DNA of 63,096 nucleotides, filler included, from Octopus bimaculoides (GCF_001194135.2; 5 parts of 5 records of this genome joined end to end with filler, not necessarily neighbours in it), one strand, 5' to 3'. Shown: positions 45,865 to 55,548, numbered from the whole stretch's first letter. Notes: generated by a model from the letters alone, not told the origin. Translations and numbers: made by a program.

Positions 45865-48800
45865 ACATTCGAACAAACGAAAGAACCAACTAACGAATGA
45901 ACGGACGTACGTACGAATGAAAGAACGTACGTACGTAAGTACAAACAAACAAATATACGTACCTACGTACGTACGTACGAACGAGCGATCGAACGAACGA
46001 AAGAACGAACGAACGTACGTATGTACATACGTACAAATGAATGAACGAACGAACGTACGTAAGTAAGTACGTAAGAAGAAACGAACGAACCAACCAACCA
46101 ACCAACGAACCAACCAACCAAGGAACGATCTTTCGTACGTACGAACGAAAGAACGAACTAACGAATGAACGGACGTACTTACGTACGTCCGAACGAACGA
46201 ACGAAGAACAAACGAAAGAACGAAGAAAGAACAAACGAAAGAACGAAGAACGAACGAACGAACGAACTTACGAACGAATGTTCGTACGTAAGAACGATCG
46301 AACGAACGAACGTTGGTAAGAACGAACGAACGTTCGTAAGAAAGAACGAAAGAATGAACGAACGAACATACGTACGTTCGGACGGACGATAGAACGAACG
46401 AACGTACGTATATAAGTCCATACATACGAACAAACGGAGGAACAAGCGAACGAACATATATACATACGAACGAATGAATCAACGAACGAAAGAACAAGCA
46501 AACGAACGTACGTATGTATGAACATTCGAACGAACGATCTTTCGTACATACACACGAACGATGGAACGAACGAAAGAACGAACTAACGAATGAACGGACG
46601 TACTTACGTACGTACGAAAGAACGTACGTACATAGGTACAAACGAACGAAGATAGGTACCTACGTACGTACGAACCAACGAACGAGCGATCGAACGAACG
46701 AAAGAACGAACGTACATACGTACGAACGAACTAACGAACGAACGTAGGTACGAACGAACGAACGAAGGAAAAAAACGGACGTACAAACGAATGAACAAAC
46801 GTACGTACTTACGTAAGTACGTACCAAAGATCGAACGAACGTACCTCATGTCCGTACGTACAAACGAACGTAATTACGTATGTACGTACGATCGAACCTT
46901 CATACGTACGTACAAACGAACGAACGAACGAACGAAGGAACTTACGTAAGTACGTATGTACGAACGATCGAACGAAGGTATGTACCTTGTGTCCGTAGGT
47001 ACAAACGAACGAACGAACGAACGTAAGTACATATGTACGAACGACCGAACGAACGAACGAACGTAAGTACATATGTACGAACGACCGAACGAACGAACGA
47101 AACTGTGTACGTACGTACAAACGAACTAATGAATGTACGTACGAACGAACAAACGTACTTTATGTCCGTACGTAAGAACGAACGACGGAATGAGAGTGCG
47201 TACGTACATACAAACGAACGAACGAATGTAGTACGTGCGTAAGAATGAATGAAGGTAAGTACGAACTAACGAACGAACGTATTTACGTAAGTACGAACCA
47301 ATGAACGAACGTACGTAAGTACGAACTTACGAACGAATGAACGAACGAACGGACGAACGCACGTAAGTACATACGAACGAAGGAACGAAAGAACGAACGA
47401 ACGTACGTAAGTAAGTACGTAAGAAGAAACGAACCAACGAACGAACCAACCAACGAACGAAAGGACGAACGTACGTATGTACGAGCGAAAGAACAAACGA
47501 ACGAACGTACGTCCGAACAAACGAATGATCGATCGAACGAACGTTTGTACGTACGTATGGACGCAGGAACGAACGTACGTCTGAAATAACGAATGAATGA
47601 ACGAACGAACGAAAGAATGAACGTACGTATGTACGATCGGATGAACGAACGTGCGTACGTAAGTATGCACGTGCGAACGAACGAACGAAAGGACGAACGT
47701 ACGTAGGAACATTCAAACGAACGATCTTTCGTACGTACGTACGAACGAAAGAACGAACTAACGAATGAACGGACGTACTTACGTACGTACGAACGAACGA
47801 ACTAACGAATGAACGGACGTACTTACGTACGTACGAACGAACGAAAGATCGTACGTAGGTACGTACGTAAGTACAAACGAACGAAGATACGTACCTACGT
47901 ACAAACGAACGAACGAACGATCGAACGAACTAACGTAGGTACGAAAGAACGTACGTTAGTAAGTACGTACTAACGAAGGAACGTACGTACAAACGAACGA
48001 ACNNNNNNNNNNNNNNNNNNNNNNNNNNNNNNNNNNNNNNNNNNNNNNNNNNNNNNNNNNNNNNNNNNNNNNNNNNNNNNNNNNNNNNNNNNNNNNNNNN
48101 NNNNNNNNNNNNNNNNNNNNNNNNNNNNNNNNNNNNNNNNNNNNNNNNNNNNNNNNNNNNNNNNNNNNNNNNNNNNNNNNNNNNNNNNNNNNNNNNNNNN
48201 NNNNNNNNNNNNNNNNNNNNNNNNNNNNNNNNNNNNNNNNNNNNNNNNNNNNNNNNNNNNNNNNNNNNNNNNNNNNNNNNNNNNNNNNNNNNNNNNNNNN
48301 NNNNNNNNNNNNNNNNNNNNNNNNNNNNNNNNNNNNNNNNNNNNNNNNNNNNNNNNNNNNNNNNNNNNNNNNNNNNNNNNNNNNNNNNNNNNNNNNNNNN
48401 NNNNNNNNNNNNNNNNNNNNNNNNNNNNNNNNNNNNNNNNNNNNNNNNNNNNNNNNNNNNNNNNNNNNNNNNNNNNNNNNNNNNNNNNNNNNNNNNNNNN
48501 NNNNNCGAATGAATGAACGAACGAACGAAAGAATGAACGTACGTATGTACGATCGGATGAACGAACGTGCGTACGTAAGTATGCACGTGCGAACGAACGA
48601 ACGAAAGGACGAACGTACGTAGGAACATTCAAACGAACGATCTTTCGTACGTACGTACGAACGAAGAAACGAACGTACGAAGGAACGTAAGAACGAACGA
48701 AATAACGAACGAAAGAACGATCGAACGAACAAACGTACGTACGTTCGGACGGACGGAAGAACGAACGAACGTACGTACATAAGTCCATACGTACGAATGA

Positions 48801-51800
48801 ACGGAGGAACACACGAACGAACGTATGTACATGCGAACGAACTTACGTACGTACAAAAGAGTGAACGAACGAAAGTGCGTACATACGTACAAACGAACGT
48901 ACGTACGAACTAACGAACGAACGTACGTGCGAACGAACGAACGTACGTACTTACCTAAGTACGTACGTACGAACGAAGGAACGTACCTTATGTCCGTACG
49001 TACAAACGAACGAACAAACGAACGAACGTACGTCCGTATTACGAACGATCTAACCTGCGTACGTACGTGCAAACGAACGAACGAAGAAATGAACGAACGT
49101 ACGTAAGTACGAACCTACGAATGAATGAACGATCGAACGAACGAACTGAGATACGTACCTACCTACGTACGTACGAACGAACGTAAGAACGTACGAACGA
49201 ACAAATGTACGTACGAACGAACAAATGTACGTACGAATTTACGTAAGTACGTACGTACGAACGATCGAAGGAAGGAACGTACCTTGTGTCCGTACGTACA
49301 AACGAACGAACAAACGAATGTACGTATGTACGAACGACCAAACGAAAGAACGAACGAATCTGCGTACGCACGTACAAACGAACGAACGAATGTACGTACG
49401 TACGAACGAATGAACGAACGTACATAAGTACGAAATTACGAAAGAATGTACGTAGGTACGTACGTATGAACCAACGATCGAACGAACGAACGAACGAAAG
49501 TACATACGTACGTACGTACGCACGAACTAACGAACGAATGTACGAAAGAACGAATGAATGAACAAACGTACGCACGTACGTACGAACGAACGAATGATCG
49601 AACGTACGTACGTAAGTCCGAACGATCGAACGAACGAACGTACCTTATGTCCGTACGTTAGAACGAACGAAAGTGCGTACGTACGTACAAACGAACGAAC
49701 GTACGTACAACCGAACTAACGATCGAACGAAGGTACCTTATGTCCGTACGTACAAACGAACGAACGAACGAAAAAACGAACAAAGATACGTACCTACGAA
49801 CCAACGAACGAAAGAACGAACGTACATCCGTACGTACGTACGAACGTAGGTACGAACGAACGAACGTACATACGTAAGTACGTACGTATGTACGAACGAA
49901 CCTGCGTACGTACGTACAAACGAACGAACGAATATACGTACGTACGAACAAACGAACGAATATACGTACGTACGAACAAACGAACGAACGAACGAAAGCA
50001 CGAACAAACGAACGAACGGACGACCGAATGAACGAAGGTACGTAAGTTCGAACTTACGAACGAACGAACTCAAATACGTACTTACGAACGAACGGACGAC
50101 CGAACGTAAGAATATACGAACGAACGAACGAACGTAAGTACGAACGAACTAATGAACGAGTGTACAAAAGAACGAACGCACGAGCGTACAAACGAACGAA
50201 CGTAAGTACGTACGAACGAACGAACGTACGTACGCTCGAACGAATGAATGAATGAATGAACGTACGTAAGAACGAAAGAAAGAACAAACGAACGAACGAC
50301 CGACGAACGAAACGAAGGACGAACGTACGTGCGTACGAACGAACGAACGTACGTATGTACGTAGACACGAAATATCGAACGAACGTACGTACGTCCGAAC
50401 GACCGAACGAAAGAATGAATGAAATAACTAACGAAAGAACGAAAGTTTGCACGTAAGAACGATCGAACGAACGAACGAACGTTTGGACGGGCGATAGAAC
50501 GAACGAACGTATGTACATAAGTCCATACGTACGAACAAACGAACGAACGTACGTACGTACAAACGAGCGAACTAACGAAATGAACGAATGAATGAACTAA
50601 CGAACGAAAGAACAAGCAAACGAACGTACGTATGTACGTACGTACGAACATTCGAACGATCGATCTTTCGTACATACACACGATGGAACGATCGAACGAA
50701 TGAACGGACGTACTTACGTAAGTACAAACGAACAAAGATACGTACCTACGAACCAACGAACGAGCGATCGAACGAACGAACGTACATACGTACATACGAA
50801 CGAACGAACGTAGGTACGTAAGTACATACGAACGATCGAATGAAAGAACGAACAAACGAACGTAATTACGTATGTACGAACGATCGAACCTTCGTACTAC
50901 GTACAAACGAACGAATGAACGAACGTAAGTACGTACGAATGATCGAACGATCGAACGAAGGTACGTATCTTGTGTCCGTAGGTACAAAGGAACGAACGAA
51001 CGAATAAACGAACGAACGTATGTACGATCGACCGAACGAACGAAACTGCGTAAGTACGTACAAACGAACTAATGAATGTACGTACGAACGAACGTACCTT
51101 ATGTCCGTACGTAAGAACGAAGGAACAAAAGTGCGTACGAACGACGGAACGAGAGTGCGGACGTACATACAAACGAACGAACGAATGTATGTACGTAAGA
51201 ACGAACGAACGAATGAAGGTACGTACGTACGTACAAACGAACGATCGAACGGACGTACGAACTAACGAACGAACGTACGTACGTATTTACGTAAGTACTT
51301 ACGTACGAACGATCGAACGCATGAACGTACCTTATGTCCGTACGTACGTACGAACGAACGAAAGAATGAACGACCGAACGAACAAACAAACGAACGAAAG
51401 AAGGTACGTACATACGAACAAACGAAAGAACCAACTAACGAATGAACGGACGGACGTACGTACAAACGAATGAAGATATGTACCAACGTACGTACGAACG
51501 AACGAGCGATCGAACGAAAGAACGAACGCACATACGTAGGTACGTATGAACGAACGAATGAACGTACGTACGTAAGAAGAAACGACCCAACCAACGAACG
51601 AAAGGACGAACGTACGTATGTACTAGCGAAAGAAGGAACGAACGTACGTACGAACGAAATAACGAATGAATGAACGAACGAAAGAACGAACGTTCGAAGG
51701 TAAGAACGAACGAACGATGGAACGAACGTTCGTACGTAGGAACGATCGAACGAACGAGCGAAATTCCCTACGTACGTACGAACAAACGTACGCACGGATG

Positions 51801-54800: not shown

Positions 54801-55548
54801 ACGTACCTTGTGTCCGTACGTACAAACGAACGAACGAACGAATAAACGAACGAAAGAACGAAAAAACGAACGATCGTAAGTACGTATGTACGAACGAAAC
54901 TGCGTACGTACGTACAAACATACCTTATGTCCGTACGTAAGAACGAACGAACGAAAGTGCGTACGTACATACAAACGAACGAACGAACGAACGTACGTAC
55001 GTATTTACGTAAGTACGTACGTACTAACGATCGAACGAATGAACGTACCTTATGTCAGTACGTACGTACAAACGAAAGAATTAACGAACGAACTAACGAA
55101 GGAACGAAAGGACGAATGAATGAACGAACGTACGTAAGTACGAACGAACGAACTTACGAACGTATGAACGTTTGTACGCACGTAAGAAAGAACGAAAGAA
55201 AGAAATAACGAACGAAAAAACGAACGAAGGAAAGAACGGAAGATCGTACGTAAGAACGATCGAACGAATGAACGAACGAGCGAAACGAACGAACGAAGAA
55301 ACGAACGAATGAACGTACGTACGTATGTACGAACGACCGAACGAAAAAAACTGCGTACGTACGTACAAACGAACGAACGAACAAACGAACGAAAGAGCGA
55401 ACAAACGAACGAACGAACGTATTACGAACGATCGAACCTTCGTACGTTCGTACAAACGAACGAACGAACGGACGAACGAACGAACGAACTCAGACACGTA
55501 CCTACGTACGTGCGAACGAACGAAGGAACATAAGAACGTACGAACGAA
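45865..55548. repeat. Complex CpG-dense satellite built from AACG and TACG tetramers, with an apparent ~4.1-kb higher-order period
   Basis: Continuous AACG/TACG mosaic with recurring rare anchors at ~4.0-4.2 kb offset: TAAGTCCATAC 46413/50518, AACAAGCAAA 46493/50611, CTTGTGTCCGTAGG 46986/50969, GAGAGTGCG 47192/51151, GTAGACACGAAATATC 50361/54452. Internal gap at 48003-48505. Confidence 0.92.

What the first reader, a model, noticed from the sequence alone, without database searches (positions are those of the whole stretch)
45865..55548. ~9.7-kb CpG-saturated AACG/TACG satellite with three-tier organisation and an apparent ~4.1-kb higher-order repeat
Seen: 4-bp monomers (AACG, TACG) build 100-600 bp cassettes punctuated by rare anchors such as TACCTT(A/G)TGTCCGT (about 20 times) and CTCAGATACGTACC (53165, 53656, 54241). 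The anchor order of ~46.3-48.0 kb recurs at ~50.45-52.16 kb, that of 48.9-49.2 kb at 52.9-53.2 kb, and that of 50.36 kb at 54.45 kb. Offsets are 3.96-4.25 kb, i.e. about 2.3 copies of a higher-order unit. There is roughly one CpG per monomer, in a genome region that is otherwise CpG-depleted, and the array is strongly strand-asymmetric (A-rich + strand). Inference: an uncharacterised satellite family that could be centromeric or subtelomeric, a methylation sink or boundary, or carried by a mobile unit. It is bracketed by two artificial joins, so its position here is unverified.
Basis: partly seen in the sequence, partly recalled or inferred. Interest (0 to 1): 0.72.

Follow-up and report, generated by a model that had tools for sequence, protein, structure and literature searches.

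The report
Degenerate AACG/TACG tandem array, nested duplications
This is a real but ordinary kind of non-coding DNA: about 9.2 kb of a decayed four-base repeat (AACG/TACG) copied onto itself at several scales, including an old, eroded ~4-kb duplication, with no sign of a gene, and no function could be tested from this one piece.

Summary
The array is real. 96% of the 9,180 read bases tile in phase as tetramers with consensus WACG: AACG 35%, TACG 20%, the rest mostly single-base variants. All copies lie head to tail on one strand. CpG observed/expected is 3.2-3.3, with A 41-42% and T 14%. The anchor TACCTTRTGTCCGT occurs 21 times against 0.05 expected and marks a ~75-bp cassette.

The '~4.1-kb higher-order repeat' is only partly supported. 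A colinear diagonal at 3.7-4.3 kb is significant (permutation p = 0.0004) and runs through about 2.3 copies. But only about a third of 120-bp windows have their best match there. Matched patches are 85-96% identical, while 800-bp global alignments give 77-78% against a 73% background. This is an old, eroded tandem duplication overlain by younger 150-300-bp patch duplications (97-98%), not a homogenised HOR.

The assembly gap lies at an exact 160-bp repeat, so order and size there are unreliable.

Substitutions show only 1.8-fold excess of CpG transitions, and 82% of indels are multiples of 4.

No relatives turned up in DNA collections, protein space, Rfam or the literature, so the source organism is unknown.

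Best reading: a neutrally evolving, microsatellite-derived tandem array, architecturally like human HSat2/3. Centromeric, subtelomeric, methylation-sink and mobile-unit roles are untested or unsupported.

The parts
45865..48002 (+). Left contig of the WACG tetramer array. It starts at the piece's edge, so the array is cut here and may extend further.
   Evidence: TRF period 4; 321 CpG, o/e 3.19; phase runs up to 766 bp.
48003..48505 (.). Assembly gap (503 N, length estimated). It sits at an exact repeat, and continuity across it is not shown.
   Evidence: N run. The right flank starts with 160 bp identical to 47590-47749 and then diverges.
48506..55547 (+). Right contig of the WACG tetramer array.
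   Evidence: TRF period 4, 1754 copies, 69% matches; 1143 CpG, o/e 3.28; 37 phase runs, longest 902 bp.
46272..50411 (+). First copy of the eroded ~4-kb tandem duplication. It contains the gap.
   Evidence: Colinear chain of HSPs to 50437-54502, offsets 3856-4389, patches 82-100% identical. Best-hit offsets are concentrated at 3.7-4.3 kb, p = 0.0004.
50437..54502 (+). Second copy of the eroded ~4-kb duplication.
   Evidence: Global identity to copy 1 is only 77-78% against a 73% background.
54512..55413 (+). Partial third copy, matching 50795-51398 of copy 2 and, more weakly, 46916-47226 of copy 1 at ~7.8 kb.
   Evidence: HSPs include 50952-51016~54790-54854 (95%), 51257-51358~54975-55076 (94%) and 46916-47021~54745-54842.
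46842..55059 (+). 21 copies of the anchor TACCTTRTGTCCGT. Starts: 46842, 46983, 47156, 48984, 49280, 49641, 49734, 50966, 51095, 51328, 52241, 52729, 52986, 53540, 53753, 53854, 54400, 54692, 54804, 54921, 55046. Each shifts the 4-bp phase by +1.
   Evidence: 0.05 expected by chance, none on the minus strand. CpG spacing of 13 occurs 18 times.
52944..53016 (+). Example of the ~75-bp anchor cassette: TTACGTAAGTACGTACGTACGAACGATCGAACGAAGGAACG + anchor + ACGTACAAAC(A/G)AACGAACG. The flanks are shared by most anchor copies, and a second subtype has AAACTGCGTA... upstream.
   Evidence: Stack of all 21 anchors with flanks.
47590..47771 (+). Young patch duplicate, partner 48506-48687 (97.3%; first 160 bp identical), straddling the gap.
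53583..53783 (+). Young patch duplicate. Partners are 54169-54309 (97.9%, offset 586) and 54359-54430 (98.6%, offset 647). The DNA between the copies is not duplicated.
53164..53177 (+). Second anchor CTCAGATACGTACC. Also exact at 53655 and 54241, and with one mismatch at 49146 and 55489.
55548..55611 (.). (AT)n microsatellite abutting the array's right end. The piece ends inside or just after it.
   Evidence: TRF period 2, 32 copies, 87% matches.

Best explanation
The region is a non-coding, single-orientation tandem array descended from a tetranucleotide microsatellite with unit WACG (AACG and its one-step variant TACG). It appears to evolve neutrally through three processes.
1. Slippage in whole 4-bp units.
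2. Point mutation, which has broken every pure run down to at most 5 units.
3. Unequal exchange or gene-conversion-like copying of larger blocks.

Block copying has produced a ~75-bp anchor cassette present about 20 times, local 28-44-bp tandem duplications and 150-300-bp patches copied 0.6-0.9 kb away that are still 97-98% identical. It has also produced an older tandem duplication of a ~4-kb block, giving about 2.3 copies that are now largely eroded. CpG stays frequent because it is part of the unit and is not strongly hypermutable here.

Shown: the anatomy, the graded ages of the duplications and the indel and substitution spectra.

Inferred: the mechanisms (slippage, unequal crossing-over or conversion), neutrality and low germline methylation.
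For: - Period 4 throughout, with 96% of bases tiling in phase and consensus W-A-C-G.
- Pure runs of at most 5 units.
- Indels between duplicates: 86 of 105 are multiples of 4.
- All anchors and all duplicates are direct, none inverted. The inverted matches reported are only the 70-78% background from self-complementary TACG.
- Duplications are graded by age and scale: 40/44/28-bp tandem; 182-bp and ~200-bp patches at 97-98%; a 745-bp offset at 89%; a ~4-kb colinear chain at 85-96% in patches and 77-78% overall.
- No coding signal. The period is 4, not 3. The long ORFs lie mostly on the minus strand (all those over 140 aa), where CGTT/CGTA units hold no stop codon, and none reaches a Pfam cut-off. 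Rfam gives no match.
- CpG transitions per site are 0.051 against 0.029 for other transitions. At the C and G positions transitions (17%) do not outnumber transversions (19%).
Against: - Only one locus of unknown origin is visible, so copy number, chromosomal position and chromatin state are unknown and a functional role cannot be excluded.
- The cassette holds perfect 24-28-nt palindromes centred on TTACGTAA: 7 palindromes of >=20 nt against 0.1 in a tetramer-shuffled null. These could be protein-binding or structure-forming.
- The substitution spectrum comes from paralogous patches in a slippage-prone array, so it measures methylation only indirectly.
- The gap and the exact 160-bp repeat at a contig start mean part of the layout may be an assembly construct.
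Confidence: 0.7

Rival explanations
1. It is one array of a true satellite family with a homogenised ~4-kb higher-order unit, centromeric or pericentromeric. We see only about 2.3 poorly assembled copies at its degenerate edge.
For: Significant colinear 3.7-4.3-kb diagonal and a partial third copy. The array is cut by the piece's left edge, so more copies may exist. Array edges of known satellites are typically more diverged than their cores (general knowledge). The architecture parallels HSat2/3, where a 5-bp ancestor forms 1.77-kb and 3.6-kb units (PMC4022460).
Against: Copies are 77-78% identical overall against a 73% background. Only about a third of windows have their best hit at that offset. 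Short-range similarity is stronger. The right end abuts an (AT)n microsatellite rather than more array. No second locus was found anywhere.
Confidence: 0.12
2. The layout is partly an assembly artefact. Collapsed, chimeric or haplotype-duplicated contigs of a low-complexity region were scaffolded together, so the kb-scale recurrences, or some of them, are not in the genome.
For: There is a 503-N scaffold gap inside the array. The right contig starts with 160 bp identical to a segment 254-413 bp before the left contig's end and then diverges abruptly, which is typical of a contig broken at a repeat node. Exact repeats of at least 140 bp exist.
Against: The ~4-kb relation lies largely within the single 7-kb right contig: 48.9-50.4 kb against 52.9-54.5 kb, and 50.3-51.4 against 54.4-55.4. 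Those copies differ by graded substitutions and by indels in multiples of 4, which looks like real divergence, not reuse of the same reads. Apart from two pairs, duplicates are <=96% identical.
Confidence: 0.12
3. It is a functional cis-element array: a cluster of palindromic TTACGTAA/ACGT-core sites that binds bZIP-type factors, or forms cruciform or Z-DNA, and acts as a boundary, a sink or an origin-like element.
For: TTACGTAA occurs 15 times, TACGTA 283 times and ACGT 469 times. Perfect 24-28-nt palindromes lie in the cassette. A 301-nt stretch folds better than shuffles as single-stranded DNA, z = -4.6. TTACGTAA as a PAR-bZIP-type consensus is from memory, not tested here.
Against: These motifs follow automatically from TACG units, since (TACG)n is self-complementary and alternates purine and pyrimidine. 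No conservation across species can be shown because no relative was found. The cassettes diverge at the same rate as their surroundings.
Confidence: 0.04
4. It encodes a repetitive protein, for example from the 429-aa minus-strand ORF.
For: Long ORFs exist: 429, 301 and 275 aa on the minus strand.
Against: The period is 4 bp, so the reading frame rotates through the unit. ORFs of at least 90 aa lie on both strands, with overlapping long ones in more than one minus-strand frame, because stop codons are rare. No Pfam domain reaches its cut-off. Database hits are ORFs read through other tetranucleotide arrays and unrelated tetrapeptide-periodic proteins, and none shares both word types.
Confidence: 0.01

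Closest known systems
Human satellites 2 and 3 (HSat2/3), including the 3.6-kb DYZ1 unit on Yq and the 1.77-kb HSat2 unit on chromosome 1
   Same: A very short ancestral unit ((CATTC)n there, WACG here) has diverged by point mutation and been re-amplified as kb-scale multimers. This gives a simple-repeat tier and a kb tier in one orientation (PMC4022460).
   Different: Different monomer and length (4 against 5 bp). HSat arrays are megabases of many units, while here about 2.3 copies in about 10 kb are visible, and they are barely above background identity. There is no sequence similarity. Copy number and chromosomal location are unknown.
Bkm-type (GATA)n/(GACA)n arrays of snakes and other animals (from memory, not checked here)
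   Same: Long arrays in which two tetranucleotides that differ by one base are interspersed.
   Different: The motifs are unrelated. Bkm is dispersed and associated with sex chromosomes, and nothing of that kind can be tested here. Bkm has no CpG in its unit.
Compound or interrupted microsatellites and 'cryptic simplicity' regions (general concept, from memory)
   Same: Slippage in whole units (82% of indels are multiples of 4), interleaved related motifs and decay by point mutation.
   Different: Length is about 9.2 kb against tens to hundreds of bp. There is internal block duplication with recognisable cassettes. The AACG and ACGT classes are among the rarest tetranucleotide microsatellites in published surveys: X. 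tropicalis 7 and 15 of 12,045 loci (PMC2735965), cnidarian means 1.0 and 0.2 per Mb (PMC4226868), Meloidogyne incognita 3 and 1 loci (PMC3091743).

Membership tests
Microsatellite / simple sequence repeat | Head-to-tail repeats of a 1-6-bp unit | tested here: met
   Period 4 over 9.2 kb, with 96% in-phase tiling.
Microsatellite / simple sequence repeat | Long, largely pure runs of one motif | tested here: not met
   The longest pure run is 5 units, and only 55% of tetramers are AACG or TACG.
Satellite DNA family | High genomic copy number, or several long arrays of the same repeat | not testable with these tools
   The source genome and reads are not available. No other locus was found in metagenome, prokaryotic-genome or viral collections (the hits are chance single matches) or in protein space.
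Higher-order-repeat (HOR) satellite | A multimeric unit recurs in colinear order at a fixed period | tested here: met
   Colinear chain of 33 HSPs at offsets of 3.7-4.4 kb. Best-hit offsets are concentrated there, p = 0.0004. About 2.3 copies.
Higher-order-repeat (HOR) satellite | HOR copies are much more alike than the subunits within a copy (homogenisation, typically >95%) | tested here: not met
   77-78% at the 4-kb offset against a 73% background in 800-bp global alignments; it is not the best offset for 2 of 5 segments. Patches are 82-100% identical.
Centromeric satellite | Location at the centromere with CENP-A occupancy | not testable with these tools
   No chromosomal context; the piece is bracketed by artificial joins.
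Subtelomeric / telomere-associated repeat | Adjacent or interspersed telomere-type repeats | tested here: not met
   No TTAGGG, TTAGG, TTTAGGG, TTAGGC, TTGGGG or TCAGG (either strand) in tandem; a single CCTAA in total. The right neighbour is (AT)n. The left neighbour is unknown.
CpG island (Gardiner-Garden and Frommer criteria, from memory) | G+C above 50% and CpG o/e above 0.6 over at least 200 bp | tested here: not met
   CpG o/e is 3.2-3.3, but G+C is only 43-45%. The CpG excess is a property of the repeat unit.
Protein-coding gene | A single open frame with period-3 structure and/or a recognisable domain | tested here: not met
   Period 4. ORFs of at least 90 aa lie on both strands, and overlapping long ones in more than one minus-strand frame. 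No Pfam family reaches its cut-off.
Transposable element or mobile unit carrying the array | Terminal repeats, a transposition protein or target-site duplications | tested here: inconclusive
   No specific inverted repeats beyond the TACG background and no domain-bearing ORF. The left end of the array is cut off, so the termini cannot be examined.
Structured RNA gene | Match to a curated RNA family | tested here: not met
   No Rfam match at gathering score.

The most novel reading that the evidence does not exclude
The piece samples a lineage-specific, previously undescribed CpG-rich satellite family built from WACG tetramers. Its cassette carries 24-28-nt TTACGTAA-centred palindromes, and the family is abundant in its host genome and marks a specific chromatin domain (centromere, pericentromere or a sex or germline-restricted chromosome). 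Its CpGs would be kept unmethylated in the germline.
Probability: 0.1. Interest if true: 0.5.

Novelty: new member of a known kind. Interest (0 to 1): 0.25.

Why it matters
This matters little on present evidence. Simple-sequence-derived tandem arrays with nested duplications are a well-known class. The unusual points are the motif class and the length of the array. CpG-containing AACG and ACGT tetranucleotides are among the rarest microsatellite types in published surveys, yet CpG has persisted here at 3.2 times expectation with little sign of CpG hypermutability. If the array proved abundant in its host, it would be a handy cytogenetic marker and a natural test case for how a CpG-dense repeat escapes methylation-driven decay. 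It is also a concrete example of where an assembly breaks, namely at an exact 160-bp repeat at a gap.

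Tried and rejected
1. Exact scans of public collections with the anchor. Metagenome contigs gave 2 hits, prokaryotic genomes 1 and viral contigs 7. All are single matches; the three metagenome and prokaryotic-genome hits I read lie in ordinary sequence with no array, and the seven viral hits I took as chance without reading them.
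2. Looking for relatives through proteins read from the stop-poor minus strand. The word-indexed search returned 86 hits. They are ORFs through other tetranucleotide arrays (RSFV/HSFI/PSFL types), including an Actinostola 'hypothetical protein', and none has both RSFV- and RTYV-type words or anchor words. The exhaustive phmmer search against 1.84 billion representatives gave the same answer. Exact look-up of the 429-aa ORF found nothing on record. I ran no further search on the plus-strand frames.
3. Literature. Searches for the motifs, for the sequence strings themselves and for AACG/TACG tandem repeats found only microsatellite census tables and unrelated oligonucleotides.
4. Rfam: no match. 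Pfam on five ORFs: only sub-threshold noise.
5. A first significance test for the 4-kb diagonal counted HSPs per offset band against a block permutation. It was not significant (p = 0.35 by count, 0.08 by bits), because the ~20-copy cassette produces matches at every offset. The best-hit version was significant.
6. A permissive-scoring chain was useless, because 73% background alignments appear everywhere.
7. Long inverted repeats or terminal repeats: only the TACG self-complementarity background.
8. Telomere motifs: none.
9. Coding, RNA-gene and CpG-island readings were rejected (see the membership tests).

Full report
**What is there.** The piece (45865-55611) is lower-case (soft-masked) throughout. 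It consists of a period-4 array from its very first base to 55547, an assembly gap of 503 N (48003-48505), and an (AT)32 microsatellite (55548-55611) that runs to the piece's end. TRF reports period 4 for 480 + 1754 copies, with 69-70% matches and 1% indels.

CpG positions keep one 4-bp phase for long stretches. There are 48 phase runs, with a median of 66-118 bp and a longest of 902 bp. Tiling in those phases covers 8,784 of 9,180 bases.
- AACG makes up 34.6% of the 2,195 tetramers and TACG 20.4%. Most of the rest are single-base variants: AATG, TACA, TAAG, AAAG, AACA, ATCG and others.
- The position consensus is W(A 58%/T 38%)-A(89%)-C(79%)-G(84%).
- Pure runs never exceed 5 units, so this is a heavily interrupted array, not a live microsatellite.
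- Composition is A 0.41-0.42, T 0.14, G 0.23, C 0.21.
- There are 1,464 CpGs, or 0.60-0.65 per 4 bp, with o/e 3.2-3.3.
- The strand asymmetry follows directly from the AACG unit. (TACG)n is self-complementary.

**Middle tier.** The anchor TACCTTRTGTCCGT occurs 15 times exactly and 21 times with at most one mismatch. All copies are on the + strand, against 0.05 expected. Stacking the copies shows a shared ~75-bp cassette: TTACGTAAGTACGTACGTACGAACGATCGAACGAAGGAACG, then the anchor, then ACGTACAAACGAACGAACG. A second subtype has different flanks, with AAACTGCGTA... upstream and ACGTAAGAACG...AAAGTGCGTACGTAC downstream.
- Each anchor shifts the tetramer phase by one base; a CpG spacing of 13 occurs 18 times.
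- Spacing between anchors is 93-1828 bp, median 245.
- CTCAGATACGTACC is exact at 53164, 53655 and 54241, with one-mismatch copies at 49146 and 55489.
- Other rare markers also recur: CGATCTTTCGTAC 6 times, ATAAGTCCATAC 3 times, GACACGAAATATC twice.
- A weak local bump in autocorrelation at lags of 28-32 bp, and short tandem duplications of 40, 44 and 28 bp, add a finer tier.

**The ~4-kb tier.** A self-comparison shows a broken diagonal at about +4 kb. The tests gave mixed strength.
- Of 149 windows of 120 bp, 45-47 have their best non-self match at an offset of 3.7-4.3 kb. Permuting 240-bp blocks gives 26.5 +/- 3.9, maximum 48, p = 0.0004.
- A colinear chain of 33 HSPs covers 2,428 bp at a mean of 89%. 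It links 46272-50411 to 50437-54502 and continues from 50795-51398 to 54512-55413, so about 2.3 copies are present. A few matches lie at about 7.8 kb.
- The signal is nevertheless modest. Any two stretches of the array align at about 73%. The 4-kb offset gives 77-78% over 800 bp and is not the top offset for two of five segments.
- Chain scores are higher at offsets of 0.3-1.5 kb.
- A cruder HSP-count test was not significant.

I therefore read this tier as an old tandem duplication of a ~4-kb block that has since eroded, and not as a homogenised higher-order repeat.

**Younger events.**
- 47590-47771 matches 48506-48687 at 97.3%.
- 53583-53723 matches 54169-54309 at 97.9%, and 53712-53783 matches 54359-54430 at 98.6%. 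The DNA between these copies is not duplicated.
- 52190-52350 matches 52935-53091 at 89%.

These are 150-300-bp patches copied 0.6-0.9 kb away. The pattern looks like gene conversion or unequal exchange followed by overwriting, which is an inference.

**The gap.** The right contig's first 160 bases are identical to 47590-47749, after which the two sequences diverge abruptly. The second ~4-kb copy follows the left contig's continuation: 47735-47927 matches 51908-52100 at 87.6%. The right contig continues instead into a segment resembling 46356-46474. The gap therefore sits at an exact repeat, which is the kind of node that breaks assemblies. Whether the two 160-bp copies are two loci or one locus used twice cannot be decided here. 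Continuity, gap length and every offset measured across the gap are unreliable. The ~4-kb relation within the 7-kb right contig does not depend on the gap.

**How it evolves.**
- Between duplicates, 86 of 105 indels are multiples of 4, which indicates slippage in whole units.
- Transitions at CpG sites are 0.051 per site against 0.029 at other sites, only 1.8-fold higher. Transversions are equal, at 0.055-0.056.
- Among monomer variants, C>T plus G>A (17%) do not outnumber transversions at the same two positions (19%).

From general knowledge, heavy germline CpG methylation gives roughly a ten-fold excess. The pattern therefore suggests that the array's CpGs are not strongly hypermutable, either because the host lacks such methylation or because the array escapes it. 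This is indirect evidence, since paralogous comparisons in a slippage-prone array are noisy.

**What it is not.**
- It is not coding. The period is 4. The ORFs of up to 429 aa lie mostly on the minus strand (all those over 140 aa), where CGTT/CGTA units hold no stop codon, and overlapping long ones occupy more than one frame there. No Pfam family reaches its cut-off.
- It is not a known RNA.
- It is not telomere-associated by motif.
- It is not a CpG island by the usual criteria, because G+C is 43-45%.
- It shows no terminal or specific inverted repeats. The inverted matches found are the 70-78% background from TACG.

**Relatives.** None were found.
- Exact scans with the anchor gave only single matches. 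The three metagenome and prokaryotic-genome hits I read lie in ordinary sequence with no array; the seven viral hits were not read.
- Protein-space searches with the 429-aa ORF used both the word-indexed library and the exhaustive 1.84 billion representatives. They returned ORFs through other tetranucleotide arrays and unrelated tetrapeptide-periodic proteins. None combined the AACG-type and TACG-type words or the anchor words.
- The literature searches found nothing.
- Published censuses place AACG and ACGT among the rarest tetranucleotide microsatellite classes.

The collections at hand are mostly prokaryotic, viral or metagenomic, so this absence says little about eukaryotic genomes. The source organism remains unknown.

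**Comparison with known kinds.** In architecture it works like human HSat2/3, where an ancestral pentamer (CATTC)n has diverged and been re-amplified as 1.77-kb and 3.6-kb units (PMC4022460). It also resembles Bkm-type arrays of two interspersed tetranucleotides that differ by one base (from memory). Membership in 'satellite family' or 'centromeric satellite' cannot be tested. The homogenisation criterion of a classic HOR was tested and not met.

**Verdict.** The array is real and the motif is unusual, but the kind of element is ordinary.
- The most likely reading is a neutrally evolving, microsatellite-derived tandem array with nested duplications (0.70).
- Rivals are the edge of a true HOR satellite (0.12), a partial assembly artefact (0.12), a functional cis-element array (0.04) and a coding gene (0.01).
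- Interest is 0.25.

Noticed in passing
window 47590-47749 and 48506-48665: The contig to the right of the assembly gap starts with 160 bp that are 100% identical to a segment 254-413 bp before the gap, then diverges abruptly. The gap therefore marks a repeat-induced assembly break, and one of the two copies may be the same DNA used twice.
   Followed up: partly
window 46801-46824, 52935-52962, 53808-53833, 54657-54676: Perfect 20-28-nt palindromes lie inside the anchor cassette, three centred on TTACGTAA and one (54657) on GTAATTAC. There are 7 palindromes of at least 20 nt against 0.1 in a tetramer-shuffled null, and TTACGTAA occurs 15 times in the array. They could form hairpins or cruciforms, or resemble a bZIP-type site, but they also follow naturally from TACG units.
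   Followed up: partly
window 47006-47101, 47730-47845, 49907-50023: Short local tandem duplications with periods of 40, 44 and 28 bp (100%, 96% and 90% identical). They form an extra tier between the tetramer and the cassette. Autocorrelation also shows a weak bump at lags of 28-32 bp.
   Followed up: partly
window 55548-55611: An imperfect (AT)32 microsatellite directly abuts the right end of the array and runs to the end of the piece. What lies beyond it is unknown.
   Followed up: no
window 53583-53783 vs 54169-54430: A ~200-bp patch is copied 586-647 bp downstream at 98% identity, while the DNA between the copies is not duplicated. This looks like a gene-conversion-type transfer and not a simple tandem duplication.
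   Followed up: partly
window 46350-46474, 48723-48841, 50455-50541: A distinctive segment (GGACGGACG..AGAACG...ATAAGTCCATAC) occurs three times, at spacings of 2367 bp (which includes the gap) and 1732 bp. It is missing from the partial third ~4-kb copy. This shows that a ~2-kb sub-periodicity or rearrangement is superimposed on the 4-kb relation.
   Followed up: partly
P0001: An annotated sea-anemone (Actinostola sp.) 'hypothetical protein' contains a long (F/L)(V/L)(R/P)S-type stretch. It looks like a tetranucleotide array read through as an exon, which is a likely annotation artefact in that genome.
   Followed up: no
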